Position numbers and translations under genes: made by a program
Notes under the pieces: model-generated
The model's input: the letters and a program-made list of their open reading frames with translations, nothing else
Told to the model about the DNA's origin: nothing
Databases searched by the model: none
Assembly (NCBI RefSeq): GCF_902459465.1
Contig: NC_047069.1
Coordinates: 14,880,001-14,944,000 of the forward strand
Direction of reading: 5' to 3'
DNA length: 64,000 bases
From: Asterias rubens
Lineage: Eukaryota
Part shown: in pieces, positions 42,262-62,295 of the stretch
Numbering within the stretch: the first letter of the stretch is position 1
Layout: every line of letters starts with the position of its first letter

Positions 42262-42459
42262 TACGTTGTTATTAAACAGGGAACCATACCATTGTCCGTT
42301 GTTTTGTTTCCCACACAGGTGTTTTGTGTTGTTTCTTTTGTTGTTTTTCTTATCAACACCATTGTGATAAAGTTTGTCACAGTAGGGGTCACTTATAAAA
42401 GTTTTACGAAGAAGGTAACACGTTATTAGATTTAGAGCAGATCACAATAAGGCTTCGTC

Positions 42460-42591
42460 ATGAATGTGTTAACGTTGATGTGTTTTGTTGCTTCGGTTCT
42501 TGCCGTCACGTTGGCACTGCCACCACCATCGCGAACATTTGCCCAAGAATACATCGTACAGCAGATGCAGAAGATCAGTGTTACGGGAAAG
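42460..42591 (+). CDS. GM2A: GM2 ganglioside activator-like (ML-domain lipid transfer protein), exon 1 with signal peptide
   Basis: MNVLTLMCFVASVLAVTLA hydrophobic leader, and phase-0 donor AAG|GTATGG at 42592. Confidence 0.85.
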
Positions 42592-43145
42592 GTATGGCAT
42601 GTTGATGTTCGGACCAGATTTCCTTCCTCTATGATTGTACTTCGAAAAAAAAACATTATTCATTTTGTATCTATAGTCGAAGGAAGTCTGAGGAAAGATG
42701 TTGAATCGGTGACCCAAGTTGTTCACTCAGTCATCATATTTCTTGTTATGACCAACAATATATAATATTATTAATTGAATCTGTTGTGTGTTTTTTACCC
42801 GAGTCCATGATTGTTGTAAATGTGATGAATTAACATGATTGAGTAATTTAAACAATTGTTTGGTCTAACTCTAAATAATGGATGAAAACGGTGGTCGTGA
42901 GTCATCCAGAATCCATTTTCCCCTTTTTTAACAAATAAAGACCTTTGTTGAATAGGAAGAAAGGAACATGATTAATAATATTAAATATACAAACAATTTT
43001 GTGTTTGTCAGTGTTTTTAAACCGATGATTAGCTTGATTAGTTGAAGTTTGGGTGAAGGATATTCCTCCTAGCCCTAGTCTAGGAGTAGGTAAAGGATAG
43101 CCCTAATCACGGTCTCCTTTTGTTGATGCCTCTTTTGTTATACAG

Positions 43146-43334
43146 AGTAAACTTGGCCTGTATAGTTTCAGTTTCACTGATTGCAGTGCACCATCGGCTC
43201 CATTAAAGGGAAACGTGACTCTCTCCCCAACCAGCCCTGTAACCCTACCTGGAAAACTCACCGTCTCTTTCAATGCTTCATTCGGAGTCACCTTGAAAAC
43301 ACCGTTGAAACTTGTGCTCAAGATTGAAAAGAAG
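43146..43334 (+). CDS. GM2A: GM2A-like exon 2
   Basis: tcttttgttatacAG|SKLGLYSFSFTDCSAP...VTLPGKLTVSF...LKTPLKLVLKIEKK|GTATGT, 189 nt, phase 0/0. Confidence 0.88.
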
Positions 43335-43345
43335 GTATGTTGGTT

Positions 43346-43719
43346 GAAGACACTGGACACTATTGGTAATTGTCAAAGACCAGTCTTCTCACTTAGTGTA
43401 TCTCAACATATGCACAAAATAACAAACCTGTGAAAATTTGAGCTCAATTGGTCGTCGAAGTTGCGAGATAATAATGAAAGAAAAACACCCTTGTCGCACA
43501 AAATTGTGTGCTTTCAGATGCATGATTTCGGGACCTCAAAATCTAATTCTAAAGGTCTCAAAATCAAATTCGTGGGAAATTACTCCTTTCTTGAAAACTA
43601 CTTTACTTCAGAGGGAGCCATTTCTCACAATGTTTTATACTATCAACAGCTCCCCATTACTCGTTACCAAGTAAGGTTTTATGCTAATAATCATTTTGAG
43701 TAATTACTAATATAGTGTC
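43346..43719. mobile_element. MITE family A inserted 11 nt into GM2A intron 2
   Basis: GAAGACACTGGACACTATTGGTAATTGTCAAAGACC..., with a degenerate right end. Confidence 0.85.
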
Positions 43720-44721
43720 AATTCAAAGCTAAACATACAATTTTGTAACAAAGGGAATGTGTTATTGATGTTATTTGGTGGCTGATATTTCCAAACAAAA
43801 ATACAAATCTATGGACTGTACTTCTTATCGTATTAAGACATCACACGTCACATTATTATAATGTTTTGGTAGTCTTCCGGTTTAATAATAATATTTTTTT
43901 TGAAGTTCCTGATTTTGGCGAGGTGCGTCAAATAATAATTATAATAATACAAGACACTTTAATAAAGCGGATTATTAGCTACACATAACAAAACTACGAG
44001 ACAGTTAATGAAGAAAAGGAGAAAAGACCAGTTCAAACATAATTTTGGAGGCACCACTCTTTTGGTTAGAAGCCTTAAGCACTCGGCAGCTTTCATTAGT
44101 AAAGCATTTTGAGAAACATTTCACTTTAATGTATTGTGGTTTAACAAAATGTTAAAAGAGATAAGTTTTCAATTCAAATCTGAGAATCATGTTTAATTCC
44201 AATATTTTTTAAAGAAGTTCCCGATTTCAGTGTGGGGCATCACATAATAATAATACAAGAGGATTATAAACCGGAATAATGCAAGAGCCTTTTTTAAGAA
44301 CATAAAACAATGAAGAGAATGAAATATATGAAGCAAAAGAGAAAGATGGATACATTATAGATAGATAAAAGGTTTATTCACAATAGTCATCACAGTATGA
44401 CAGGTCTGTATGCTTTGTTATGTAAGGGCAAGGGCACCAAGGCATTTTCTCCTTGGTAAAGGGCACCCTTTGAGGAAATTGTAAATTTCTACTGGAACAT
44501 TTTAAGGGCACCAAGGCAGTGCCCAGGGGGCACGGAAGCAGTCACCTTCGTTGCCTCTGTGAAGTATCAGGCCTGATAGTATAAATTGCAACTACCGAAC
44601 TACAACACATCATTGGAAGACAAGTTCAAACATAATTTTAGAAGCATTAACAAGAAATACAAGAAAATACAAACATTGTTAACATGAAGGGCTTAACAAA
44701 TTGCTTTAATTTTGGTGACAG

Positions 44722-44872
44722 GAATTCATCTGGATTGATATTCCATGTGTGGATAATATCGGATCCTGCACCTATGATGATATTTGCTCGATGATCCCAC
44801 CCACCCCGAGCTCAGGATGTCCCCCTCCATTGAAGGCTGCTGGGATTGCCTTGTGCATGTCCATTCCAACAG
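44722..44872 (+). CDS. GM2A: GM2A-like exon 3, containing a +1 frameshift
   Basis: EFIWIDIPCVDNIGSCTYDDIC is in one frame and (G)LPCACPFQQ|GTAAAG in the next. The exon is 151 nt between phase-0 neighbours. Confidence 0.85.
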
Positions 44873-45720
44873 GTAAAGTGATGAGTTATAACAAATCTTC
44901 AAGTTTGTGGTGACACCGTATGTGTGTGCCCAATTTCATAGCTCTGCTTACTCCCGAATTCTGCGCTTTCGATCACTTTTCTCTGCTTATGTGCAGGTGC
45001 CAAATTTCTTTGCTAGCTCTGAAAGCGTAGAACGCCTGCGGCCTAGTTACATGGAGTTCGCACAAGTACAAGCAAAGATTCCCCGCTAACCCGTGAAATA
45101 CGCTTGCTGTAAGCACCGATTCAGTAAGCAGAGCCATGAAATTGGACCCATACATGTACCTGTTGAAAATTCTAGATCTCATTCTTCATGAGGCAACAAA
45201 AGCTTTGTTTCATTTGGACAAAATTTGTTGTTTTTTGTTTGTTTGTTTGTTTATTTTATTTTATTATTTTTTTTTTTTGGGGGGGGGGGTGGTTACTTAA
45301 TGTATTAAACCATATTAAGGATTTGTTTTCGACCCCTGGTTTTCCAACTTGCCATGTGAATAAATATGAAAGAAGCCCGAAAAGTTTAATTATTTAGCTT
45401 GCACCATTTATTTTAATACTTAAGCCTGCAATTGAATTCGGTGAAGTGATTATGTTTCGGTGACCTGTTGGCTTTCAATGACTTGTTATCTGTAAATATA
45501 TGAATATGTTTGCTTTGTACATTTATTCATATCTAAACTGCAGGAAAAAGACTAATTTTTGTTTTTACATAATGCAGTACAAACCTGCAGTTAATAATGT
45601 GGGGGAAGTAAAATGCTTTTATTTACGGCCATGACAATATTAACAACTCTAGATGAATTGACATTGAGGTAGTTGAACGTCTTACACTTCCTTTTTAAAT
45701 AATGTTTTTACAATTTTCAG

Positions 45721-45885
45721 GGGAAGTACAGCTTGAAGCCCACAGTGCTGGAAATAGCGTCCCTTCCTTCAGGCATTCCAGATTTCCTGGCCGACGGAGA
45801 CTTCAAAGTGAACGCAAAACTGTTTGATGGTAACAACGAGCTTGGCTGTGTCGATCTGGCCTTCACGCTGAAACTGAACAACTAG
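45721..45885 (+). CDS. GM2A: GM2A-like exon 4 (last)
   Basis: ttttcAG|GKYSLKPTVL...IPDFLADGDFKVNAKLFDGNNELGCVDLAFTLKLNN*, with AATAAA at 46045-46050. Confidence 0.9.
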   Translation, partial: GKYSLKPTVLEIASLPSGIPDFLADGDFKVNAKLFDGNNELGCVDLAFTLKLNN

Positions 45886-47761
45886 TATGCGTCCACGTGC
45901 TTGTGATCAAGGTGATTAGAGTAAACAGAGCAATTATGCGGGTTGGAGGGGGGGGGGGGGTTGATGTAGTTGGATGAACACTGATATGGCCTTAGATGTC
46001 AAAAGTTTATCCAAGATCTTTATCTTTCATATCTAGAAAAAAACAATAAAGTGGGGCCAATGTGAGACTTTTGCGGGCAATAGGTGGCAGCAGACGTGCT
46101 TGGTAAACCAAGGTTTTTGCAACAAGTGTGTTCTCAGAACTATAAGCACATACACAATAGAATTGTTTGGTTATTCAAAGCCACCTTGTGTAACAAACGA
46201 TACCCCCAACCCCCTTGCAGAACAAAAAGAGGGGGAAAAAAAGAAACATCTTTCTTGATCCGCCCCAAAGCTTGTTATAAGGCCTCTTCCTAAACCCACA
46301 TAATTTTTTATTGTGTTTTCTGGAATTATTATTGCTGTAGTAAATTAATTTGTCAGAATGTTGTATTGGGTGGGTCTTAGAAAGCAATTCTAAAATGTAT
46401 AAACAAAAACAAACAAACTATGCAGTCAATTTTGAGCTTCCATGACAGTCTATTTTTAATCTACTGACGTTCCATTTTTACACAATACATTGTAAAGGAG
46501 CCTACTCGTTATTTGCTGAAATCTGTGTATTGATTTTTCTTTAAAAAGGCAGGTATACTTTATGTAATTGTTAAAATTGTCAAAAAATGTCAATTGCTTG
46601 GTATGCCCAACACTAAGCTTAAAATAATAAACATGTGATAATTTAGACTCAATTGGTCATCAAAGTTGCAAGAAAATAATAAAAGAACAAACCCCCTGGA
46701 TTCAAAGAATTGTATGTGTTCAGATGCCAGAGACTGAAGCCTCTCAGGTTCAAATGTTTTGGGTGAAACATTATCTCTTTCTCCAAAACTACATTACTTC
46801 AAAGGTTGTCATATCTAGCAAGTTTTATAATATCAACAGCAATATCCAGTGCTCTTTATCAAATAAGTTTTGATGGTCATTCATATTTGGAGTAATTACC
46901 AAAGGTATACTCCCTTTAATATGAATTTTTTTAGATGATTTCTGTTCACAAATCTTATTACTTAATAGAATTCTAAGGTACTTGTCCGCCAGGGAGCAAT
47001 TTACACTGTGTTGGCAAAAAAAAAGTCAAATACATTTTCTGCTCTTTTAAGTATTTCATAAGATGGCATTGTTAGCCATTAAAGGATGGGACTCTTTGTA
47101 AAAATGATTTATACAAACATTCTTAAAATGGGTTGTTGGAGAAATTCATTGAAATATTTTATATAAAATTTAATGAATATTTTTTAAGATAGCACTTTAA
47201 AGTAAAATGCATTTATAATGACTTACAACAGAAATTTGAAAAGGAAAGCAAAACAAAAATGTAATTTAAACAAATTAAATGAAAAGTGTTTAATTTTTAA
47301 ATACAACATTTTTGTTTAAATCAAAGTCATATACTTTTGAATAGGCGAACAATCTCGCATTGTTTTACAGTATGAGTGGAGAATAACAGCCGAGTATTTA
47401 TTTATACATTTGGAAGAATAATTTTATGTGATAGTTTAAAAATGAATATATGCTGAGTCTCAGGTTTATGATTTTGAGTTCTTTACTCTTTTTCAAAATG
47501 TAAAAGAAATGACTTTGTATTTGTTGCTAATGGTCATTAAAGCCATTGGACACTTTCGGCAAACAGTATTGTCCAAGGCAAACCTGTGAACATTTGAATG
47601 TATGATTACTTAAATTGCGTATGAATTGGTCAGTATATAAAATACTAATTTATCAGGCATATATTTTGTTCTTGTTATCTGAAAGCATGCAGACAACATT
47701 AATTGTCAAAGACCAGTATCTGCACTTGATGGGACCATCATCAACAAACATGTGAAATTTC

Positions 47762-48142
47762 AAAGGAACACGTTGCCTTGGACCGGTCAAGTTGGTCTTT
47801 GAAAAGCGTTTGTAACCGTTTGTTATAAAATGCATATGGTTAGAGAGATGTTTCAAAAGTAGAATACATTGATCCACACACATTTGCCTCGAAATTGCGT
47901 GGTTTTCCTTTTGCTTTGCGAACTAACACGGTCGGCCATTAATTATGGGAGTCAAACATTTGACTCCCAAGGCCCAATGGCCGACCGTATTAGTCGACGA
48001 GGTAAAAGGAAAACCACGCAATTTCGAGGCATATTTCGTGTGGATCATTGTATTCTACTTTTACAACATCTTCCTACCCATATGGATTCTATAACAAACG
48101 GTACCAACTCGATCCGACCGGTCCAATGCAACGTGTTCCTTT
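47762..48142. mobile_element. ~380-bp almost wholly palindromic MITE
   Basis: AAAGGAACACGTTGC...GGACCGGTC / GACCGGTCCAATGCAACGTGTTCCTTT, with arms pairing nearly to the centre. A partial copy lies at ~59897-59985. Confidence 0.85.
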
Positions 48143-48544
48143 AAGCTCATCGGAGTCGAACGAAATCGGTAAAAAACACCCGATAATTTTTTTTTTTTAA
48201 GTTGTCACTGTTTTTCAACATCAGGTTTTGGGCTCTATAGATCTTTATCACTGTGTGGTCATCTTGATTTAACTCCATTCCAACTCATTGTAACCAAACT
48301 GAGGCTGGACGAAATAAAAGTCTGGTGCCATGTTTATGCAATGAATGTTAGCATTCGTTACTGTTATGGAAACAGGGAACATGACCAAGATGGTGACAGC
48401 GTGATAAAGGTCTGTACATATAACATTTCAGGCAAAATATTTCAAGGGAAGTTTTCCACCGTGTATACATAATTATACGATCTAAGTTATATACAAATCT
48501 TGTGCACTTATAAATGTTATGCAATATAACTACTGTCAAACTTC

Positions 48545-49152
48545 AACTATTTTAATCATGTGCCTTTTCCTCAGCAACGTTAATTGTATTGTAAGAATTA
48601 TAAAATCATGCAATAAATGAACTCAAATCTTATGAACAATTATTGTCATTTTAACATGAATAACATGTAGTTCTTTTACTGAGTTGTTCATAATACTAAC
48701 GTTACGAATTGAACCAACATAAAAAGCTATTGCGGCAAGCTGCCGCGATCGCCAGAGAAATACAATGACTAAATAGAAAAGAATAATAATTTTATAAATT
48801 TGACAGAGTTTGGCGCTTCAAAATCCAATGGTTAACCCGTGGCTGATGTTGGCAAGTTTCAGTCTTTTCCAAGTTCACTAAAAAGAAGAAATGCAGCCAT
48901 CCTTCCAATTGTTGTTAGCATATTTATTTAGCTGTTTGGAGCAAAATATCACTCTAAACATTTTACTTTTTACAACCGCGAAAAAGGGAGCACAGCGCCC
49001 CACTGTAGTACGACTGATAATGACAGTTCGAAAAATGAGTATGGGTGCCTAGCCAAAGCCGCACTAATTTTGAGAACTATTTTCTACAAGGCTCCATTCA
49101 AGTATTATTGTTTCATTAGAATGTTACAATTTTATTCCGACTTTCACTCAGA
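48545..49152. repeat. ~600-bp segment duplicated in direct orientation at ~58430-59075
   Basis: Colinear blocks such as TTTGGCGCTTCAAAATCCAATG and AAGAAGAAATGCAGCCATCCTTCCAAT occur in both places. Confidence 0.85.
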
Positions 49153-50037
49153 ATTGGTTTCAAAAACCCAACTTTCCAACTGTAAGCTGAATTTACCGTA
49201 TACGCATCTGGAAGACACCAATTAACGCCATGTACAAACATTGAGTATAATTTTACTTTACCGAGCATGGTTCATGCGTTTAAAAGAAAAATAACCAAAA
49301 ACTGCACAATATTGCTTTGCAGCTGAATTATAATAACTTACAGGAATGTGGCTTGCAGAAAAAAAGCGTCCACTGCAGCTGTTCATGATCGATGCTTTCA
49401 ACGCCCACCAAGACTAAGAAGTAAACTACATGTATATAAACACTAAATAGTAACCTTGCGGGCACATCCATGCAGTATCTCTTTTGAGGGAGTGTTGGCT
49501 CTGATTTGAGATATTTTTCAAGCACGCATGAAACGTTTCTTAAACCTTTTGTAGACGAAGCAGACCAAGACTATCAAAATTCCAAGATAATTTTCCGACA
49601 GAATAATACAATTGGCGGTGCTTTTGTTATAATGGACGTAGGCCTACAATATTTCAGTGTAGTCGATCTCATAATGACACTATGCCATCGCATGCTGAAT
49701 CCTCACTTTTTACCAGACTAGATCGTTTGAACCAACTTTCATATCTTGTTCATCACTTGCACGCGAACAGATACGCATACGTTACCTAGGCCTACATATT
49801 ATGTAGTGATGCTGTATCCGTCGCACTAACCGTATCCGTTCGCATGCGAAACCTTATAGGCCTAGGCTATACAGTAACAAACCGATGCAATACAAGACGA
49901 CATGGACATCATTCTTTTCAGGCCATTTGCTCGAATACATTTTAATGAAAATACACATGTGGGCTATTCCACATACATTAGTAAAGTTGCAGTTCTAATG
50001 ATTTTGATTTCGTTATGATTTTATTCAAGTGATATTG

Positions 50038-50189
50038 CTACAGTATAACGCAGAAACCTCCCCCGTTTTCCTCCCGCGTGGTTAATACAGGCTGAAAGTA
50101 CACGTGGAAGACATCATTCTTTGTGCCCATCTCAATTGCTTTGGATAACTCCGAGTCGTTTGAGAATGAAACAAGATCACCTTCATCAT
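50038..50189 (-). CDS. PB1-CaaX protein (p62/SQSTM1-type PB1 domain), terminal coding exon 2
   Basis: tttattcacAG|(D)DEGDLVSFSNDSELSKAIEMGTKNDVFHVYFQPVLTTREENGGGFCVIL*, containing the OPCA acidic motif. Phase 1 matches exon 1, and AATAAA lies at 50025-50020. Confidence 0.85.
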
Positions 50190-50308
50190 CTGTGAATAAA
50201 AAAATAAAAAAAACATAAGAAAGAATACAAAATTAAAAGTTTAGCTACAGGAAAAAAACTATAAACTATACCTGTACATGCTAAATGGCAACTAAAGCAC
50301 TGATCCTG

Positions 50309-51324
50309 ATGCTGCTCTCACACTGAGGCGATCATATTCTTGCGAATATTATAAATATTTTAATTTCGCGGTGAATTTGCCCCAAAATTGCAGTTGGATA
50401 TTTTATTTTTATTTGTTAATTTGTTTAAATTAAATTACCATTACAACAACAAAATTACAGGAATATTGGTAACAAGTAAATAAATAAAGTTATAAATGCT
50501 AAGTAAGTACAATTGATGATTGCAACCAGAGGAGGTAACCCTCCTGTATTGTGGAGCACCCAAACTGCTGTAAAATGCTGCACCGGTTCAACAAAATGAC
50601 AAAGTAAGTTAAAGTATCCCTTTTAAAGAATAAATAACGCATAATTATTAAATAATAATAATTATGTTCATCATCTCGGTCACCCCTCGGTGGAAATTGG
50701 AAATTGGGTCTTTCATGCTCTCTGGACACCTCCCTGAGGCGAATATTCTCAATTTTGGCTGAATATTGGCAAGACATTTGCAATACATTTTTAATGGCAC
50801 TTTGACAAAAACACGCGTTCGCAAGCATTGCTGTTTACTCATCAAGCATTGGTAACCGTTCGTAAGCAATGGCAATCCATTTTGTGGAAGCATTCGTAAA
50901 CTATGGCATCGGTTCGCAACAAATGCTCTAAAATATTGGTAAAGTATTGGTGAGCCATTTGTAACATTGACAACAGTGTTATTGGTAAGGAAGTGGACCC
51001 GGCGAAAGTTACAAACGCCTTACAAATGCATTTACGAACGTTGCCAACGCATACGCACGCTTTACCAACGTTCTGGCTCACCAATGCTTACGAAAATCGA
51101 CGGCGAATGTCGGATTAACGTCTTCACAACATTCGATGAAATTTAGGAAGCGCTTCCTAAATTGACCGATCTTCACCAAGAGGTGGAGAATGACTTGTGC
51201 ACGTTCCGAATTTGTTACCGCCGCTTACAAAGACACGGCGAATGTCGCGAAGTTTGAGCGATTGTCAAACATTTCCATTTGTAAGCACATTCGCTAGCAT
51301 ATTCGCATAGTGTGAGAGCAGCAT
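50309..51324. mobile_element. ~1-kb non-autonomous TIR element
   Basis: ATGCTGCTCTCACACT ... AGTGTGAGAGCAGCAT, with the interior rich in GC(A/G)TT/AATGC-type short repeats. No clear TSD. Confidence 0.65.
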
Positions 51325-51783
51325 AAACGAAGATGACTGACAGAAGGTTTTGACAAAACAAGGAACATGTGAAGAATAGATGAGGGTATATATAGGTAAG
51401 GACATGAAATGGGGAGGGAGAGGGAACAGCAGGTAATTAGGAAAAGGCATTATCCTAGCGCTTTGTGAAATCGACGGCAGGATTAACAAAAGTGTGGGCC
51501 TACCACTACCGTGTGTCAATCTAGAATAATGACATGACGATATCCTGATAAACATTCGATAATCTATAATCAATAAACTAAGGTCATGTGTTTTATCCGG
51601 ACTGAACTTTTGGTTTGGGATAAATCACATGATCTTCGGCAAAGCAACCGCGGGACCAAGCTAGCCTGAGCCGAATCTGGAACGGAAGCCGTGGTTTCGA
51701 AAAGGGCCATATTAGTTATATTATTTGTACTTGAACAGAGCACCAGTCTACTTGCAGCACTGTGCAACAATGGCACCCGAACA

Positions 51784-52606
51784 CGGGTTATTCTAAAACC
51801 CCCTCGACCCCCTCGACCCCCACGACCCACGACCCCCTCGACCATCGACTTTTGTGCGATCTTTTTTTCTGTACACCGAAATTGCCACAGTTCACAACCT
51901 CAGCCAATCACGCACACAATGTTGTATGCTGACATCATGCTGACATCGACTACCATGCCTCGCACATCGCAACACAGCGTACGAGCCACGTAGTATGCAC
52001 GAAGCAAACTTCGCGTGATTGGCTGCCGAGATCGGGCCTGTGGCAATTATGATGTACAGATAAAAAAACGCGGCATTTCCACGTGTATCTCTTGGCCGAT
52101 CCGAGATTATTATCCCAAGTGGAAACCTGCGTTTACCGCCCGAGTACGATTTAATACGGCCAACTCATTACGTGATGATCAGGCAGACCCATTTCCGGCC
52201 GATCGCTCCCGTCCTGTGTACTATTACTACTAGTTGCTCTAAGCGGAGCGCAGAGCTCAAGGTTGTAGACCCGACCGACCGGCCACACGGACGTGTTTGG
52301 GGTCCCCAATCGGTGTGCACTTGTCGTGCATGCAGAAGCGGAGAGTAAAAACTCCCAATTCTGTGTGGCCGATGCAGATAAATATAACCGCAGTCTCAGA
52401 CTTGAGGTCAAGCCTAGTCGTGGAAGGAAGTTGCGTCACGGACGGATCACACACTATGATTTCTAAATCGGGGACTTAATTCTTACTCGGCCGTAAAGCG
52501 ACATTTTATGAATTCGGAATTGGGACATTCTTCGAACACGGGCGGACGTCGGAGGGTCGTGGGTCGTGGGGGTCGAGGGGGTCGAGGTTTTTTTTAGAAC
52601 AACCCC
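51784..52606. mobile_element. ~820-bp TIR element with G/C-tract termini
   Basis: GGGTTATTCTAAAACCCCCTCGACCCCCTCGACCCCCACGACCCACGACCC ... GGGTCGTGGGTCGTGGGGGTCGAGGGGGTCGAGG...TTAGAACAACCC. Confidence 0.75.
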
Positions 52607-52714
52607 CCAAACACACAGGCAACGGTTGTTAGAGCCGACGATAGAGGGTGCGTTTGTTTAGCTTCCCTGGGTCGACCCCGGTCTGCCCCCGTACGTTCAA
52701 ATAGCTTTGACGGG

Positions 52715-53222
52715 GCTCAACAGATTTAAAAAAACTGCAACGAGTTCAAAATTCAGCTGCTAGATTAGTCACATGCACTCGTCCACGACGTGATCACATA
52801 ACTCCCATCCTACAAAATCTTCATTTGCTACCTGTTCAAGCTAGAATTAAATTCAAAATTCTCCTTTTAACTTTTCAATGTTTGCAAGGCACAGCCCCGA
52901 TTTATCTCCAGGACCTAGTTCACAAATACATTCCTTCGACAAATTTGCGTTCTAAGTCAAAGTCTCTTCTTGTCATTTCCACCCGTTACAAAATCTTATG
53001 GTGCTCGCTCTTTCCAAGTAGCTGCAGCTGAACTGTGGAATGGCCTACCCGAGTCTGTCAAGGATGCTTCCACAGTTGACACATTCAAAAAACGCCTTAA
53101 AACTCATCTTTTCAACGCTTTTCAGTAACTTTCTTTGATGGTTCATTCTTCCTTTATTTTGTTTTCCTTAAAGCGCATAGGGACTTTGTTTTAATGATAT
53201 GCGCTATATAAACACGGTTGTT
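52715..53222 (+). mobile_element. L2-clade LINE 3' fragment (ORF2 C-terminus and 3' UTR), frameshifted
   Basis: LQRVQNSAARLVT..DHITPILQNLHLLPVQARIKFKILLLTF..APIYL / LWNGLPESVK..FKKRLKTHLF, stop at 53126-53128, tail GCGCTATATAAA. Confidence 0.9.
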
Positions 53223-53223
53223 T

Positions 53224-53525
53224 ATTAGCTGTTCCGACCGTCCGTCGGAACAGGTATTGTTTTCGTCAAGATTTTTATTGTTTTTATTATTAGCTGTTCC
53301 GATCCAGTCGGAACAGCTATTGTTTTCGTCGAGATTTTTATTATTAGCTGTTCCGACCGTCCGTCGGAACAGGTATTGTTTTCGTCTAGATTTTTATTGT
53401 TTTTATTAGCTGTTCCGACCGTCCGTCGGAACAGGTATTGTTTTCGTCTAGATTTTTATTGTTTTTATTATTATTAGCTGTTCCGACCGTCCGTCGGAAC
53501 AGGTATTGTTTTCGTCGAGATTTTT
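53224..53525. repeat. Five 54-68-bp tandem units each holding a 10-bp stem hairpin
   Basis: CTGTTCCGAC-CGTCC-GTCGGAACAG at 53229, 53348, 53410 and 53478, with a variant at 53294. Confidence 0.9.
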
Positions 53526-54420
53526 TTAACGTTTTAGAAACGTTTTTTTTTCAAAACGCCATAGGTTTAACTTACGACTTTTTTGTGGCAAGATAATCTT
53601 AGAAACGGTAGAAATGAAAGACTTGAGTTCTATATTAAATCGAAGCTTAGTACGTAACTTAGTTTTTCTACGTATGATTTTTAATCTCATAATCAATTAG
53701 CCGAGTTTTTAAAGATATGAATATTTAATTAGGCAATCTTGTTAACAGCATATCTCCCAAAATAAACGTCCGATTTTCAAAAATTCTTCATATATTGATT
53801 CTCTGGGTATTGAAGATGTGCAAAATGAAGTAATTTTATATCTCACGTCATCTTGTAATTGTTTTTATTAAATGTTTACAGTTATTATATAAGGAATAAA
53901 ATCGCAACATTTTGAGAAAGGAGTACAAAATAAATGTCACGAAAACTATTTTAGTCTCAGTTTTAGCATGGAGGTAGAAATGGCACATGGTTTTAGCAAA
54001 GCATGTAAAAACGTATTAAGCTCTGAGCATGGCGCGTCTTTGACCGGGCTCGTTTCAGGCGACGAGCGTAGACGACGAAAATAGACCGCCCGGGATTTGG
54101 AATTATTTACGGGTAAAGTCACCTTGTTCGCGCCGGGGACCATTTGCCTAAACTAATTCCAGTATTTCGCGTTACGTTCGGAAATTAGACCATGACAAAC
54201 AAAAACTCTTTGACAGGAATACAAAAGCAGAGATTTTATTATGCTGACGTTTCTCTGGTGGTTGAGTGGCTCAGTTTTATAGAGCTGCTTATAATAAACA
54301 GGCAAAACATTTTGCTTTACAAAATTGCAGAAATTGAGCAGAATACCTGGATTCACAACTTGAACATGAGGCATGGTTAAGCTGCTTTTTGTGTTTAAAA
54401 AGCTATTATGTAGTTTGGTC

Positions 54421-55801
54421 CTGGGCCAATGGCTTTTAAAGGAAAGAATCGCAGCGCTTACGTAATCAGGGAACTGTGCTTACGCTAAGCGTATTTTACA
54501 GCTTAGCCGGGAATGTGTTCTTCACATCACAATTCGCATCAAAAAATTTGCTACAGTTGACTAATTGTGCTCAACTCCTGCGAAACTTTCACTGCGAAAA
54601 CAGTGACTTAAAAATTTAAGTGTGCGACTAGTGTGCTTTAGTGTTAAAGTCGCGACTACAAATTATTATTTGAGTCGCGACTACTGTTTTTCTCTACTCC
54701 GTTATAATCGTGTCCACTCATCGACTACAAAATTTGTCCCGACTACCTGTTTGGTGAACCAGTTGTGTTGCTTACTACTATTCGCAACATAATTAATATT
54801 GCCCTTGCGGCATAGCGGCACAAATCTTGAGAATCCGTACTTTATCTCGACAAGTGTCATAGTTAGGTTTGAAGTGCGACTAGTCGAGTAGTAAATTTCA
54901 CTAGTCACACCCATTCGCAACATAATTAAAAATTTGTCCCGACTACCTGTTTGATGAACCAGTTGTGTTGCTTACTACTATTCGCAACATAATTAATATT
55001 GCCCTTGCGGCACATAGCGGTACAAATCTTGAGAATCTGTATTTTATCTCGACAAGTGTCGTAGGCAGGTTTGAGGTGCAACTAGTCGAGTAGTAAAATT
55101 CACTAGTCACCCATTGGCAACATAATTAATATTGCCTTTGCGGCACATAGCGGCACAAATCTTGAGAATCCGTATTTTATCTCGACAAGTGTCGTAGTTA
55201 GGTTTGAGGTTCGACTAGTCGAGTCATGATGGGAACTTGCTTAATGAAAAAGATTCAGTGCTCTGCAGAAGCATTGAATTCTGCGCTTACGTCAAGCGAA
55301 ATAGACTGCTTATAGCAGGGATTTCTTTTGTTTGTGTGCTTCCAAGTTCGCACATTATTTTCCAAGCTTGCACATCACAGTAAAGCGGAAAATGGTGATC
55401 GTAAGCGCAGACTTTGGTGGTCATGAGAACCATGTAATTTTGCCCTGTAAGTAGGTTTGGTAAGTAGGTTTGGTAAGGCCTACACTTCAAACATGTAAAG
55501 TCAAAAAAGATTGTTAGTACATGAGGGGAAATCTTGTGAAACTGGTCCAATTTGACTCTGCTTCACTGCGTAAGCAAAGAATTGACACATCAGAAGCGCG
55601 GATATTATCGCTTACATAAAGCATATTTCACAGCTTAGCAGGAATATTTTTGCTTGTGCGCGGGGAAACTTATCATTATGTAATCTTTGCTTTGAACTAA
55701 TTGCACAGATATTTCAGCGCCTGCACAGTAAGCGGAGAATGGTGGTTGTATAATAAATGGGCAGAGTTTGGTTGAAGCAGACAGAGCCATAAAACTGGGC
55801 C
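54421..55801. mobile_element. Nested family-D-like element with an internal ~200-bp tandem repeat
   Basis: CTGGGCCAATGGCT ... AGAGCCATAAAACTGGGCC. GCAACATAATTAATATTGCC units occur at ~54783, 54983 and 55116. Confidence 0.6.
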
Positions 55802-56129
55802 GTGTTCTATAGGGGAAATTATAGCTTGACATTTTATGACAGTTTTGGTCTCTGCGACGTACACATACAAATACAGAGTCAGACACAGACATTACGGTGC
55901 AGAAATCGTGCAATTGAAGTGTCTCATAAGAGCGCCCCCTATCGGCAGGAGTAGGAAAATAAAGGAGTATCCTACAAATTAATTATGTGTTTTTAAACAC
56001 GTAAAATAATATCAAATGGAAGCTTTAGGATGTTTAGCTTAATATCTATCATAAAACATATTAAAATTCTTTATTAATTAACCACCAGTGACCCTCATTA
56101 TCATATTAATTAGGAAATCTTTGCAGCAT

Positions 56130-56790
56130 CATATCTCAAGAACTTCACGGCCGACTTCAACTGTTGTTAAAGACTCCTTGGGGGTTGGAGATTAATTTGA
56201 AAAAACTGTGACCTCAAATTGACCTCTACTTCCGCGTCAACCGGAAGTGGGACCATATCTCAAGAACTATACAGCAGATTTTCAAAATATTTTCAGTTAT
56301 AAACTCCTTAGGCATAAAATATTAACTTTAAAAAACCGTGACCTCAAGTTGACCCCTACTTCCTGGTCAAACAGAAGTGGGACCATATCTCAAGAACTAT
56401 ACAACAGATTATCAATTTTGGTTCAGTTATAGACTCCTTGGGCATTCAAGATTAGTTGAACCAACTTTGACCCCATGTTGACCTTTACTTCCGGGTCAAC
56501 CGGAAGTGAGCCCATATCTAAAAAAAGTACAAAGCTAATGTTCAAACTTCAGTTATAGAGTCTTAGGCAATAAATAATTAGCTTTGGAAAACTGTGACCC
56601 CAAGTTGACCTCTACTTCTGGGTCAACCGGAAGTGGGACTATATATCAAGATCTACACAACCGATTTTATAGACTCCTTGGCATTGCAGATTAATCTTTG
56701 GTAGCTGTGGGCCCATGTTGACCTTTACTTACGGGTCAACCGGGAAGTAAGACCTTAAATAACAAGAGCTACACAACTTTTTTGAAACCT
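56130..56790. repeat. ~125-bp tandem repeat (about 5 units) inside the HINE
   Basis: Units ATATCTCAAGAACTA...GACTCCTTGGG...TTGACC...ACTTCCGGGTCAACCGGAAGT. Confidence 0.85.
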
Positions 56791-57339
56791 TCTTTCAGTT
56801 ATATATTCATTGGGCAATGAAGCACATAATCCAAGCAAAACAACAAGGAACAGCTTTGTGTTTGTTCACAAACACTTAATGTCTAGTTATTATTATTATT
56901 ATTAGCCCCCAGTGCCCTGCCTGTGGAGTGGGTCACTTGGTGGTGACCTGAGATGCATGCCGTCAACACGCGAGAGAGAGTGTGATCGTTCGATCCAGGG
57001 GAAGCTTATCGAATACACCCACCATAGGCCTATTTTGGGGTTGGACATTTTACTCCTTATTTATAGTTGCGGGACATTTTGACGTTTTTGTTTTTATCGG
57101 TCGTTTGTGATGCAACACACAGTCTACTTCAGCACTGCGCAACAGTGGCGCCCAATCACACTTGCAACGGTTGGTGAAATGATTGTCTCTGATTCTAAAT
57201 CCCCCCAAAACTTCAACAGTTGTTTCCATGTGTGTCGCATTTCAAACGACCGATAAATTGATAATTATACCGTTTTGCTTATATAGACTTCCAATGGTTT
57301 GTATTTTTATGATGCTAAAGCCTAAACTTTATGACTCAC

Positions 57340-57595
57340 CTTTCCAGAACAGCCGGTGATATCGAGCCCCACTATAGAAGCGCCTGGCTGACTCGAAGAA
57401 GGCATTTTTTAATTCAGATTGCAACTCATCATAGTTCAGATCTAGTTTTTCTTTGGCGAATGGTAGGTAGCGAATTTCCTGTGGAGCGTTAAGTGTTGCT
57501 TTCAAATTCACAGTGTCACTGTCATCACTTTCAACGGCACTTAGCAGATATGCCTTTACGTGAAGTTTTCTAACGGAGTTGAATTCATAAGCCAT
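57340..57595 (-). CDS. PB1-CaaX protein (p62/SQSTM1-type PB1 domain), coding exon 1
   Basis: accATGG start. LHVKAYLL...EIRYL...YDEL...LFWK resembles p62 LTVKAYLL...EIRRF...HYR. Phase-1 donor G|GTGAGT at 57339. Confidence 0.88.
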
Positions 57596-58429
57596 GGTAT
57601 GGTTGTTAAATGTTAGGCCTATAATGTTAAAATAATATCAAACTGCTCTTTTTCACGTTTTTCCAATGAAATTATTTTATCCAAACCGCGGTTTTATCCA
57701 ATTAACTCTAAAGGTTATGTAAAATCAATGCGGATAAAGACATGCATGAAGACAGGGGACCAGTGGGGAAATCCCCAAACACTTCCTCGATTTTATCTAC
57801 CGACCGAGGGCGCACTACAATCAGCGTAGGTTTTTATATTAAATAAAATATACATGGTAGGTATATACCCAATTTTTAGCAAAATGAATTTGCTAATGTG
57901 TACAAATTTGACCTTGCATATCAGAAAATGATCACCAAAAAAGTAAGCGTGTGCAATTTATGATTAGTTTTTACCGCTTGTCTTTGACTAGTACTAGTAG
58001 AACAATATTGTCTGGAAGGTCTCTGTCTGCACACAGTCCAGCTGAATCTTCCCTACCATAGCCTCTACATCATAAAAGCGCAGCGTCTTAACCTGCAGGT
58101 GACTTTGTTTTTAGAACTGCAATTAATATTTATCTGTTTTAAAACCAGTATCGGTAATGTTAATTGCTCCCTATTGTTGTCCTTTGTTATTTTGGCAAGA
58201 GAACCAGTGTCTACTTTTGTTTCAAGAATGAGGGCATGGTATAATTAATTTACTCACTTGGTTGAAAGAAAGAAAAATCTAGAAATTCGCAATTGGGTCA
58301 CACATCTAGTCAAACTGAGGTTTACCACTAGTCGGTGTGGTACCTCCACTACAACGTCCCATTTGCTATACATCCACTTATAAAAAGAACAGGTTGGAGA
58401 CTGTATACACAAGAAACATTTTGTCAAGC

Positions 58430-59760: not shown

Positions 59761-62295
59761 AAAGTTACATGACTTTCAAATTCAGTTTTTACTGAATAGC
59801 TAGTAAAGACACAAGATGTTGCAGATAACTGAACTATTTATAACAACAAAAGTTTACAAAAGTTATAAATTTAAAAACAGGCTACTTAATGTATTAAAGG
59901 GACACGTTGCATTGGATCGGTCCAGTTGGAATTGCATGGTTTCCTTTCACTTTGCGAACTAACGGTTGGCCATTTTTTTGGAGTCAATCTTGTTGATTGG
60001 GTGCTATGGCTTCACTTCTGCGCCTTGAACACCCAGCAGGGTGGATATGTGCGCATTACAAGTCTTAATATTATTATTATTATGAAAAATTACATAAGTT
60101 TATGTTATTTATCAGAATAGGCTATACTGTTAAAAACGTTCAAATTGTCTTGTTAATCTCTTATACGCACATTGTTTATGGTCATTACCCAGAGATCGGG
60201 TGGTCCTAGGGCACCGCACTCAGTCTCACTGATTTAATAGGTGGAAGATATCGAGGGGGGGGGGGGGTGTTGGTCTGTGTGTGGAAAGGGTGCTTATGTA
60301 GGCCTACCCAATGGTGCTTACTGTGAGTCGCCCAGTTCAAGGTACACCAAGACTAGACGTAACTATATAAATACTAAATAGTAACCTTGCGGGCACATCC
60401 ATGCAATATCTCTTTTGATATGTCTTTAATTGTTTGCCTAATGTTTTTAAATCATACAATTCTAGTTTTTGTTGCTGTGTGTTGTTTTTTATGTTTTTAA
60501 AGCCTGGACGAATAAACAAATAAATTAATAAATAAAGTGATAATCAAATAAATAAATAAATAAATAAAATAAATAAGAGGCTGTAATCTTAGAAAAATAA
60601 TGAGCTCGGGAAATTCCGTCCAACATCTTGAGATCATTAAATAATTTACTGTATGGATGATGGTATCATGAGTGTAAGATGACAATACCCTGATGAATAT
60701 TCAAAAAATTATAATCAAATAAATTAAGGAAGGTCACGTGTTTTATCCGGACCGAGAAAAAAGTCAATGACTGCACCACAGTCAAATTTGTTTTCACACA
60801 CTTTTTTCGAGGGTATTCAACATCTATCTAAACATGATTGTCTCTTATTCTAAATTTTCCAGCAAACTTCTAGAATTGTTTTTTTTGTGGGTATTGCATT
60901 ACAAACGACCAAAAATGTCCCGATGACAATGTGCAGGCTGCGATAGAAGCACTGTTATCAGGTGTAGCCAAGCGACGGCAATTATTTGGAAAAAATATTG
61001 ACAATCCATATTTACATTTAGACGGGAAACGCCCAATATAATAACACTTTAGTACTTTTTATACAAGCCAAAATCTATAGAGGGCGTACTTGAACCAGAG
61101 TAGGTAAAAATGCCAGGAGAAGCGATGTGCCAACATCCCCCTGGTAAAATAAACTAAGGTACTTGAAAGGTTGCTGGGTTTTTGTATGTAGGGAAAATTC
61201 AATATCCAACTGCATTTTATGTATGTTGAATTATTATTAACTTCAGAAATAATTTATCAGATGTATTCAATTAAAAAAAAATCACAGTGGTGTTTAGCGT
61301 TTATCCTTTGTAACAGTATTCTTGAATTAAACAAATCATGCCAACTACATTACACATTATGACAACCGGTGACTTGAAGTTTCAACCCTGACGGACATTT
61401 CCAGTAAGATTCAAGTCTTCGAACAGTTTAAGAGCATCACTGGCTTCGACCAGTATGCACATAAAGAAAAAGTCCTGGGATGGCGTGAAGGCACCTTTGA
61501 AGCTGTACATTACTGGGGACAACATCAACAAGTTGGTCGAGCATCTTGTGTAGTTTGGCCCCTAAGGAGCCGTGTACAGAATTAAGAGGCCTGCAAGAGA
61601 GCGGGTTAGATCTTCGCTTACCGTTCGCAGTCTTCCCTCTTTTCTTCTTCCCTCTTTTCTCAGTTGTCTTTCCTCCGTTAGGCAAGCTTGCAGTATCCGA
61701 CCTCCGTTTTCCCGTCATTATTCTTATCTTATGTGTTGGTTTAAATGTAGTTAACCTATTTTACAACCATTTGACGATTGCTCGAGATGTTCTTTTGCGG
61801 GGAAGGAAAGTCCAATTTTCTCTGAATGTGAATCGCACAATTTATCTTAAAAAGTGGAGGTCGGATAAGGCAATAATTGCCCTTACCTTGGTCCTTTGGT
61901 GACCTCCAATGCACATCCAGATGCATCGACATTAGACAAACAACACAGCATAACACCACAAAATCCAATATCCAACTTCAACTCCCTTCCCTGGTCACAA
62001 AGTACTAGGCTGGCCCTGGCCGCGATGGGTTCGAATCCCTATTTACAAATTACACCATACAAAATGTTGGATGTGTGAACTGGTGCGTGACTTTTTTGTA
62101 ATCTGGGAATGCCAGGAATAGATATACACAAAATAGAGAAATTACATGAAATGGAATATTAAAAAGCGAGCCGGGAGCGTCAAACCTGGGTAAAGGTTTT
62201 GCTACCGTCGGATGTCAGAAGAACATGTTTTTACGGTTTTGTATTTTCAGTTTTATTTTAACCTCATGATTCACAACAATTGAAAACTTACTGTT

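What the first reader, a model, noticed from the sequence alone, without database searches (positions are those of the whole stretch)
50038..57595. A p62-type PB1 domain fused directly to a CaaX prenylation box: candidate membrane-anchored PB1 scaffold or decoy
Seen in sequence: two phase-1-compatible exons (57595-57340 and 50189-50038) join into a 135-aa ORF. It has VKAYLL (basic Lys14), EIRY, and WK|DDEGDLVSFSNDSEL (acidic OPCA motif), then a 19-aa tail ending GGGF-CVIL-stop, with AATAAA 13 nt after the stop, so exon 2 looks terminal. Established: p62/SQSTM1 has a type I/II PB1 that polymerises head-to-tail and binds aPKC, NBR1 and MEKK3, followed by ZZ, LIR and UBA domains. From memory its first intron falls at the same HYR|D position. 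C-aliphatic-aliphatic-Leu is the GGTase-I geranylgeranylation signal. Inference: this is a p62-derived paralog that lost all cargo and LC3-binding modules and gained a lipid anchor. It could nucleate, cap or tether p62/NBR1 filaments or aPKC signalling on membranes. It also has a long acidic insertion between beta1 and beta2 and Tyr in place of the second Arg of EIRR. I do not know of a described PB1-only CaaX family, but I cannot search for one.
Basis: partly seen in the sequence, partly recalled or inferred. Interest (0 to 1): 0.88.

Follow-up and report, generated by a model that had tools for sequence, protein, structure and literature searches.

The report
Sea-star PB1-only protein with prenylation box
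This is a real, expressed two-exon gene of the starfish Asterias rubens that encodes only a p62-like PB1 docking domain followed by a CVIL lipid-anchor signal; that combination has not been described, but whether the lipid is actually attached is untested.

Summary
Exons 57595-57340 and 50189-50038 (minus strand) join in phase 1 with GT..AG. The product is a 135-aa protein identical to the RefSeq model LOC117293614 of Asterias rubens ("uncharacterized protein"). RNA contigs from four runs carry the exon junction and run unspliced through the stop codon. They continue at least 1.6 kb further, so the AATAAA 13 nt after the stop is not the main 3' end.

The protein passes Pfam's PB1 threshold and folds as a PB1 beta-grasp. 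Its only significant relatives among solved structures are p62/SQSTM1 PB1 domains. It keeps the beta1 lysine and all four OPCA acidic residues. It has Arg-Tyr where p62 has the Arg-Arg finger needed for filaments.

It belongs to a small tandem family seen only in Asterias and in marine-metagenome fragments. Tail DNA is homologous in all five genes, but only this gene and its A. amurensis orthologue still encode CVIL. The orthologues differ about 1.8-fold more at nonsynonymous sites than the local neutral rate, and all four indels are in frame.

The best reading is a geranylgeranylated, non-polymerising PB1 adaptor or cap. Lipidation and binding partners are inferred. No paper describes a natural PB1-CaaX protein.

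The parts
57340..57595 (-). Exon 1 coding part: Met1 to Lys85 plus the first base of codon 86. Contains beta1 (K14, codon 57556-57554), the variable acidic beta1-beta2 insertion, and E40-I-R42-Y43 (R42 at 57472-57470, Y43 at 57469-57467).
   Evidence: Identical to the N-terminal 85 aa of the RefSeq protein P0001. A at -3 and G at +4 around the ATG, read from the sequence.
57596..57716 (-). Probable 5'UTR.
   Evidence: RNA contigs extend 359-377 nt beyond the exon-2 junction (records 16, 22, 31). That equals 256 nt of exon-1 coding sequence plus about 103-121 nt. Only the first 30 loose letters were shown, and they match the end of exon 1.
50190..57339 (-). Phase-1 intron of 7150 nt, GT at 57339-57338 and AG at 50191-50190. 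About three times longer than in A. amurensis because of insertions, for example 52722-56904.
   Evidence: Zero RNA depth at 50258-50419. Collinear blastn against the A. amurensis locus.
50038..50189 (-). Exon 2 coding part: the rest of Asp86 to Leu135 plus TAG. Contains the OPCA acidic motif (50189-50146), alpha2, beta5 and the disordered tail.
   Evidence: Pfam PB1 hit on this piece alone. RNA contigs with 0 differences.
50041..50052 (-). CaaX box Cys132-Val-Ile-Leu135 (TGC GTT ATA CTG), directly before TAG at 50040-50038.
   Evidence: The same 15 nt are present in A. amurensis. CVIL is a proven GGTase-I/III substrate box. AF2 pLDDT is below 50 for residues 123-135.
50020..50025 (-). Proximal AATAAA. 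Present and conserved, but transcripts read through it.
   Evidence: Continuous RNA coverage downstream.
48431..50037 (-). 3'UTR, at least this long. The true 3' end is hidden by a very high-copy repeat that starts near 48540.
   Evidence: Overlapping contigs 49825-50191, 49475-49843 and 48431-49504 at depths 10-19, like exon 2. 97% identical to A. amurensis over the first 300 nt.

Best explanation
LOC117293614 of Asterias rubens is a functional, expressed, two-exon gene. It encodes a stand-alone p62-type PB1 domain (residues about 10-121) with a short disordered tail ending in the geranylgeranylation box CVIL. It most likely arose from the 5' part (PB1 exons) of a p62-like gene. It now belongs to a tandem, fast-evolving family restricted to Asterias.

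Proposed mechanism (inferred): GGTase-I attaches a C20 lipid to Cys132. The VIL residues are removed and the cysteine is methylated at the ER. Because the tail is acidic or neutral and has no polybasic stretch or second cysteine, the protein should sit on endomembranes.

The PB1 keeps the beta1 lysine, one arginine and the full OPCA acidic face. It has Arg-Tyr instead of the tandem-arginine finger. It should therefore not build filaments itself. It should instead bind other PB1 proteins one-to-one or cap them, and so tether or titrate them at membranes. Candidate partners are p62, aPKC, Par6, MEKK/MEK5, NBR1 and its own paralogue.

Shown: the gene model, expression, the splice junction, PB1 identity, p62 as nearest relative, presence and ancestry of the CaaX tail, and rapid in-frame evolution. 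Inferred: lipidation, location and partners.
For: Gene and transcript.

PB1 identity: Pfam 30.5 bits against 23.6. The AF2 model has the order b-b-a-b-b-a-b at pLDDT 63.

Nearest relative is p62: phmmer and hmmsearch against all PDB sequences give nine p62 PB1 sequences at E 1e-4 to 5e-3, with TFG next at 0.06-0.45. The top 14 Foldseek PDB hits and top 4 Swiss-Prot hits are p62 at 22-30% identity. The first ESM Atlas structural hit is sequestosome-1.

Interface residues: K14 aligns to K7, and D86/E88/D90/E99 align to D69/D71/D73/E82 (with numbering from PMC6978347). They are kept in all family members.

CaaX: CVIL is the box of Rap2B (GGTase-I co-crystal 1N4Q), FBXL2, yeast Rho5 and rice CaM61. 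The tail is disordered in the model. Tail DNA is homologous in all five family genes, and TGCGTTATACTGTAG is intact in three of them, so the box predates the paralogue split.

Selection for an open frame: four indels between the orthologues are all in frame, while pN is 8.4% against 4.9% in 6.4 kb of local noncoding DNA (Fisher p 0.015) and dN/dS is 1.9.

Non-polymerising prediction: PB1 filaments need the tandem arginine. PKCzeta, which lacks it, stays soluble, and MEK5, PKCzeta and MEKK3 PB1 domains cap p62 filaments (PMC6978347).
Against: There is no direct evidence of lipidation. The CaaX box is dispensable for the family. The 116/118-aa paralogues stop before a decayed tail. The A. amurensis 123-aa paralogue has a 13-nt insertion with a stop ahead of its tail. 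That middle paralogue has lost both exons in A. rubens.

CVIL identity between the two species is uninformative: 15 unchanged bases are expected with probability about 0.47 at 4.9% divergence. No third species could be found.

dN/dS above 1 is not significant against dS alone (p 0.35). The second orthologue pair has omega about 0.95, which is compatible with weak constraint.

RNA depth is low (5-19). Three other same-species RNA runs held none of the sampled words.

The AF2 model is only of moderate confidence. The R42-Y43 to R21-R22 equivalence rests on the EIRR/EIRY motif and the model, not on a scored alignment.
Confidence: 0.5

Rival explanations
1. It is a soluble PB1-only regulator and the CVIL ending is incidental. 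The family works as small cytosolic PB1 competitors or caps. The tail is a leftover, for example read-through past an old splice site, that happens to look like a CaaX box and is not modified or not needed.
For: Two of three paralogue lineages lost the tail yet keep intact PB1 open frames and pass Pfam PB1. The stretch just upstream of the Cys differs between the species (GGGF against AL). There is no polybasic or palmitoylation second signal (read from the sequence). Short PB1-only clusters exist in other animals.
Against: CVIL is an optimal, experimentally proven GGTase-I box. It sits on a disordered tail, which is the usual context. A cytosolic protein ending in it would be expected to be modified by default. 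The box is intact at DNA level in three genes despite fast change elsewhere.
Confidence: 0.27
2. It is a young partial duplicate of p62 drifting without function. The locus is a birth-and-death cluster of truncated p62 copies that are transcribed at low level and evolve neutrally.
For: Omega is about 1-1.9. Paralogues have been truncated and one deleted. The family is seen only in Asterias plus metagenome fragments. Contig depth is low and the sequence is absent from some RNA runs.
Against: Four of four indels are in frame (chance about 0.01) and the ORF is intact in both species. Interface residues and core motifs (HVKAY, IRYL, LFWK, EGD, AIEMG, HVYF) are kept between paralogues only about 50% identical. 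UTRs and splice-proximal intron are more conserved (2%) than the local background of 4.9%. Nonsynonymous divergence exceeds the neutral rate rather than equalling it.
Confidence: 0.17
3. These are the first two exons of a longer p62-like gene. The main product would splice from near 50058 into downstream ZZ/UBA exons, and the 135-aa form would be a minor read-through.
For: A GAG|GTTTCT string exists at 50058. Contigs drop rare isoforms, so a minor spliced form cannot be excluded (tool note).
Against: Contigs of four runs run unspliced through the stop and at least 1.6 kb further. The GT is absent in A. amurensis. NCBI models in both species end at the same stop. The next downstream gene is a convergent ML-domain gene on the other strand.
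Confidence: 0.03

Closest known systems
PB1 domain of p62/SQSTM1 (sequestosome-1)
   Same: It is the nearest relative by sequence and by fold. It shares the N-terminal L-x-VKAYLL strand, the EIR motif, the full OPCA acidic set (D69/D71/D73/E82 equivalents), the canonical beta1 lysine, and an N-terminal position in the protein.
   Different: There are no ZZ, TRAF6-binding, LIR, KIR or UBA modules. Tyr replaces the second arginine of the filament-forming finger, and His replaces R96. There is a 14-residue acidic insertion between beta1 and beta2. The C-terminus is a CaaX box. Identity is only 22-30%. It did not reach E 0.001 against any p62 in the 1.8-billion-protein library.
PB1 domains that cap or shorten p62 filaments (NBR1, MEK5, PKCzeta, MEKK3; PMC6978347)
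   Same: This is the predicted mode of action: a PB1 without the tandem arginine that can dock on a p62 filament end or on another PB1 but cannot propagate a filament.
   Different: Those are domains of large kinases or receptors and are soluble. This one is a stand-alone domain with a predicted lipid anchor. Binding has not been tested.
Engineered aPKC-CaaX and Par6-CaaX fusions
   Same: They are PB1-containing proteins forced onto membranes through a C-terminal CaaX box. They are the only PB1+CaaX combinations found in the literature search.
   Different: They are artificial constructs that use Ras or Rho tails with polybasic regions to target the plasma membrane. Here the box is natural and has no polybasic signal.
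CVIL-ended prenylated proteins (Rap2B, FBXL2, yeast Rho5, rice CaM61)
   Same: They have the identical C-terminal tetrapeptide, which is geranylgeranylated in those proteins.
   Different: The folds are unrelated (GTPases, an F-box protein, calmodulin). Several of them carry a second membrane signal that is missing here.

Membership tests
PB1 domain (Pfam PF00564) | Score above Pfam's gathering threshold | tested here: met
   30.5 bits against 23.6 for P0001. The orthologue and paralogues score 31-35 bits.
PB1 domain (Pfam PF00564) | Ubiquitin-like beta-grasp fold with the order b-b-a-b-b-a-b | tested here: met
   AF2 model: E11-17, E41-46, H55-67, E77-85, E91-94, H97-107, E112-121, at moderate confidence (pLDDT 63). 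The top 30 Foldseek PDB hits are all PB1 domains.
PB1 domain (Pfam PF00564) | Type A face: OPCA acidic motif | tested here: met
   D86, E88, D90 and E99 align to p62 D69, D71, D73 and E82 (residue roles from PMC6978347).
PB1 domain (Pfam PF00564) | Type B face: conserved lysine on beta1 | tested here: met
   K14 in LHVKAYLL aligns to p62 K7 in LTVKAYLL (first stretch). It is invariant in the family.
p62/SQSTM1 orthologue | ZZ, LIR and UBA modules after the PB1 | tested here: not met
   The protein ends at residue 135. The RNA keeps the stop. Pfam finds only PB1. The next gene downstream is an unrelated convergent gene.
p62/SQSTM1 orthologue | Tandem-arginine finger (R21-R22) needed for filament formation | tested here: not met
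   E-I-R42-Y43 in this protein, and I-R-Y in every family member. The equivalence rests on the motif and on beta2 in the model, not on a scored alignment.
p62/SQSTM1 orthologue | Same intron position and phase inside the PB1 as SQSTM1 (evidence of partial duplication) | not tested
No tool path gave the A. rubens SQSTM1 gene or any p62 gene structure.
CaaX substrates of GGTase-I | Cys at -4, aliphatic a1 and a2, Leu at X, directly before the stop | tested here: met
   TGC GTT ATA CTG TAG at 50052-50038. It is present in the RNA contigs without change.
CaaX substrates of GGTase-I | The box is a proven substrate sequence | tested here: met
   Literature: Rap2B CVIL in GGTase-I crystal 1N4Q and FBXL2 CVIL (PMC9141697); yeast Rho5 CVIL (PMC11304957); rice CaM61 CVIL (PMC3886798).
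CaaX substrates of GGTase-I | Flexible, exposed linker before the cysteine | tested here: met
   Residues 123-135 have pLDDT below 50 and no secondary structure. The sequence TTREENGGGF is glycine-rich and polar.
CaaX substrates of GGTase-I | Box conserved in orthologues beyond chance | tested here: inconclusive
   It is identical in A. amurensis, but at 4.9% neutral divergence 15 unchanged bases are expected about 47% of the time. It was lost in the paralogues. No third species was found.
CaaX substrates of GGTase-I | Lipid actually attached and protein membrane-bound | not testable with these tools
   This needs metabolic labelling, mass spectrometry or localisation of wild type against C132S.

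The most novel reading that the evidence does not exclude
This is a natural lipid-anchored PB1 'cap'. It would be a geranylgeranylated, non-polymerising p62-derived PB1 that docks on p62 filament ends or on aPKC/MEKK-type PB1 partners and holds them on endomembranes. It would be evolving under positive selection in a birth-and-death gene cluster, perhaps because a pathogen targets the p62 pathway. That would be the first natural case of membrane targeting of a PB1 scaffold by prenylation, and a ready-made tool for studying p62 body nucleation at membranes.
Probability: 0.25. Interest if true: 0.7.

Novelty: new variant of a known kind. Interest (0 to 1): 0.48.

Why it matters
PB1 domains organise selective autophagy (p62, NBR1), cell polarity (aPKC-Par6) and MAP-kinase cascades. 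So far their membrane recruitment is known to go through partner proteins or other domains, and researchers add CaaX tails artificially to force it. A natural PB1-only protein with an optimal geranylgeranylation box would show that evolution used the same trick. It would also offer a minimal, genetically encoded membrane tether or cap for p62-type assemblies.

The locus is also a compact example of gene birth and death. It appears to show a partial copy of a multidomain receptor, tandem duplication, repeated loss of the tail, loss of one copy in one species, and faster-than-neutral protein change between two sister species.

The weight is limited. The family is seen in one sea-star genus only, and nothing about lipidation or partners has been tested.

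Tried and rejected
1. Alternative splicing out of exon 2 at GAG|GT (50058) into ZZ/UBA exons. Rejected: four runs give contigs that run through the stop, the GT is not conserved, and the downstream neighbour is a convergent ML-domain gene.

2. Proximal AATAAA as the poly(A) site. Not supported: coverage continues to about 48431. The true end could not be found because a very high-copy repeat breaks the contigs.

3. Pseudogene reading. Rejected on the in-frame indels, intact ORFs, conserved core and expression.

4. A third species for the CaaX test. A degenerate DNA pattern for the exon-2 start found nothing in JGI metagenome contigs. A protein search with exon 2 alone found no candidate. Run X1 (organism A), laid at 85% likeness, gave 3'UTR pieces about 97% alike, but the coding piece was not among the rows shown. 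It is probably A. amurensis, which was already in hand.

5. Finding the A. rubens SQSTM1 gene to compare intron position and build a PB1 tree.

6. My first estimate of selection used only the 800 nt next to the exons as baseline (2.1%, p 9e-6). That baseline is itself conserved. I replaced it with 6.4 kb of collinear noncoding DNA (4.9%, p 0.015).

7. Other copies in the window. tblastn finds none. The paralogue P0011 lies about 1 kb beyond the window end.
Full report
**Observation.** On the minus strand, 57595-57340 opens with ATG in a good context. It runs 85 codons plus one base and ends at G|GTGAGT. The second exon begins at 50189 after a pyrimidine-rich tract and CAG. The split codon reads GAT, and the frame continues to TAG at 50040-50038. 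The 135-aa product carries K14 (VKAY), E-I-R42-Y43, the acidic run D86-D-E-G-D...D97-S-E99-L, and ends in C132-V-I-L. AATAAA sits at 50025-50020.

**It is a real gene.** The product is identical to the NCBI protein "uncharacterized protein LOC117293614 [Asterias rubens]", so the window is starfish DNA and the model is already in RefSeq, unnamed.
- Four public runs of the same organism hold the sequence. Their contigs cover 49825-50191 without a single difference.
- The contigs then continue with letters that are the reverse complement of the end of exon 1, and extend 359-377 nt beyond the junction. Depth in the adjacent intron is zero. These are therefore RNA-derived contigs that carry the predicted junction, the CaaX codons and the stop.
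- The same runs cover 50037 down to about 48431 at similar depth, where a very high-copy repeat breaks assembly.
- Exon 2 is thus terminal, but the 3'UTR is at least 1.6 kb and the proximal AATAAA is read through.
- Three other RNA runs with the same species label held none of the sampled words, so expression is probably not ubiquitous.

**What the protein is.**
- The full protein passes Pfam's PB1 threshold (30.5 against 23.6 bits).
- An AlphaFold model built on the seven-row family alignment has moderate confidence (pLDDT 63). It shows the PB1 order b1-b2-a1-b3-b4-a2-b5, with residues 123-135 disordered.
- Against all PDB sequences, the only hits better than E 0.01 are nine p62/SQSTM1 PB1 sequences. 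TFG and PKCzeta follow at 0.06 or worse.
- The top 14 Foldseek PDB matches and the top four in Swiss-Prot are p62, at 22-30% identity. The first ESM Atlas structural match is a sequestosome-1 cluster.
- The HMMER alignment puts K14 on p62 K7, and D86/E88/D90/E99 on D69/D71/D73/E82. The p62 filament paper names these residues as the interface (PMC6978347).
- That paper also shows that PB1 self-polymerisation needs a tandem arginine (R21-R22). PKCzeta, an AB-type PB1 without it, stays soluble. MEK5, PKCzeta and MEKK3 PB1 domains cap p62 filaments, and NBR1 shortens them.
- Here the motif is R42-Y43 in every family member, and His stands where p62 has R96.
- I therefore read this as an AB-type PB1 with a full acidic face and a weakened basic face. 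It is a docking or capping module rather than a filament former. This step is inference.

**The family.**
- An exhaustive HMMER search of 1.8 billion representatives found seven proteins at E up to 0.001. Five of them are starfish family members, and none is a p62. A profile search of the 5.8-billion set added one more.
- Members are: the A. amurensis orthologue (132 aa, 76% identity, ends CVIL); A. amurensis 116 aa and A. rubens 118 aa paralogues ending QQIN/QKIN; an A. amurensis 123-aa paralogue; and exon-1 read-through fragments from marine metagenome assemblies.
- In A. amurensis the three genes lie in tandem on one strand.
- In A. rubens the 118-aa gene lies 7.4 kb upstream of ours, about 1 kb beyond the window end.
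- The middle gene survives in A. rubens only as an intron relic at about 60082-61520. Both of its exons are deleted.

**Ancestry of the tail.**
- The DNA after the PB1 aligns in all five genes.
- TGC GTT ATA CTG TAG is intact in our gene and in its orthologue.
- It is also intact at the end of a 5.1-copy tandem array of a 39-nt tail unit in the A. amurensis 123-aa gene. There it lies behind a 13-nt insertion that brings a stop and a frame shift.
- In the 116/118-aa genes an earlier TAA precedes a decayed version of the tail, with Cys kept or changed to Ser, a 3-nt insertion, and TAG changed to CAG.
- The CVIL tail therefore predates the split of at least two paralogue lineages and has been lost repeatedly. 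That argues it was once coding and that it is dispensable for part of the family.

**Rate of change.**
- Between the two orthologues, Nei-Gojobori counts are 25.2 nonsynonymous and 3.8 synonymous differences: dN 0.089, dS 0.047, ratio 1.9. The ratio alone is not significant (p 0.35).
- Against 6.4 kb of collinear noncoding DNA around the gene (4.9% substitutions), the nonsynonymous proportion of 8.4% is higher (odds ratio 1.75, p 0.015).
- The 800 nt directly next to the exons are unusually conserved (2.1%).
- All four indels between the orthologues are multiples of three.
- The second pair (118 against 116 aa) has omega about 0.95 with more diverged flanks.
- Together this fits a protein kept open and changing faster than neutral on its surface, while interface residues stay fixed. 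The data set is small.

**The CaaX box.**
- CVIL is the box of Rap2B (co-crystallised with GGTase-I, 1N4Q) and of FBXL2 (PMC9141697). It is also the box of yeast Rho5, where it is called canonical and gel-shifted when put on Ydj1 (PMC11304957), and of rice CaM61 (PMC3886798).
- Here it sits on a disordered Gly-rich tail, which is the usual context.
- There is no polybasic stretch or second cysteine. From established knowledge of CaaX trafficking, this predicts ER/Golgi rather than plasma-membrane residence (from memory, not tested).
- Conservation in A. amurensis does not add weight, because 15 unchanged bases are expected about 47% of the time at 4.9% divergence.
- Attempts to find a third species failed.

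**Comparison with what is known.** Full-text searches for PB1 domain with CaaX or prenylation returned only engineered fusions such as aPKC-CaaX, plus papers on prenylated partners such as Cdc42. Nothing mentions LOC117293614. The protein is a PB1 domain and its PB1 is p62-like. It is not a p62 orthologue, because ZZ, LIR, UBA and the arginine finger are missing.

**Verdict.** The best explanation, at confidence about 0.5, is a geranylgeranylated, non-polymerising PB1 adaptor or cap on endomembranes. The main rivals are a soluble PB1 regulator with an unused CaaX-like ending (0.27) and a drifting partial duplicate (0.17). It is a new variant of a known kind and of moderate interest.

Noticed in passing
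window 60082-61520 (minus strand): This is a relic of a third family member. The stretch is collinear with the flanks and intron of the A. amurensis 123-aa PB1 paralogue. The parts matching its exon 1 (L001 2675-3725) and its exon 2 plus tail (L001 4210-5252) are missing, so A. rubens seems to have lost this gene through two deletions.
   Followed up: partly
L001 4624-4820 (A. amurensis): There are 5.1 tandem copies of a 39-nt unit that encodes the tail (PVVISEENVCCVR in one frame). The last copy ends in CVIL-TAG. The array lies just behind the annotated stop of the 123-aa paralogue and is out of frame because of a 13-nt insertion.
   Followed up: partly
window about 42400-45900 (+), with RNA coverage to about 47566: This is a convergent neighbour gene, orthologous to an A. 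amurensis 211-aa ML-domain (PF02221, MD-2/NPC2-like) gene. Its contig depth is 10-20 times higher than that of the PB1 gene. The last-exon ORF 45733-45885 alone gave no Pfam hit.
   Followed up: partly
window 47478-48540: This is a very high-copy repeat (summed contig depth 10^4 to 6x10^5) with an internal inverted repeat around 47780-48140. It lies between the two convergent genes and breaks all transcript contigs, which hides the 3' end of the PB1 mRNA.
   Followed up: no
window 52722-56904 (intron of the PB1 gene): This is an insertion of about 4.2 kb relative to A. amurensis. It includes a retrotransposon-like ORF fragment on the plus strand (52825-53128, ending ...KKRLKTHLFNAF). It explains why the intron is 7.1 kb here against 2.4 kb in the sister species.
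   Followed up: no
L005 10001-12042 (A. rubens, about 1 kb beyond the window end): The paralogue LOC117293700 (118 aa) has Gly instead of Glu before the IRY motif and stops at QKIN. Its 3'UTR still shows the decayed tail (…CASLLQ).
   Followed up: partly
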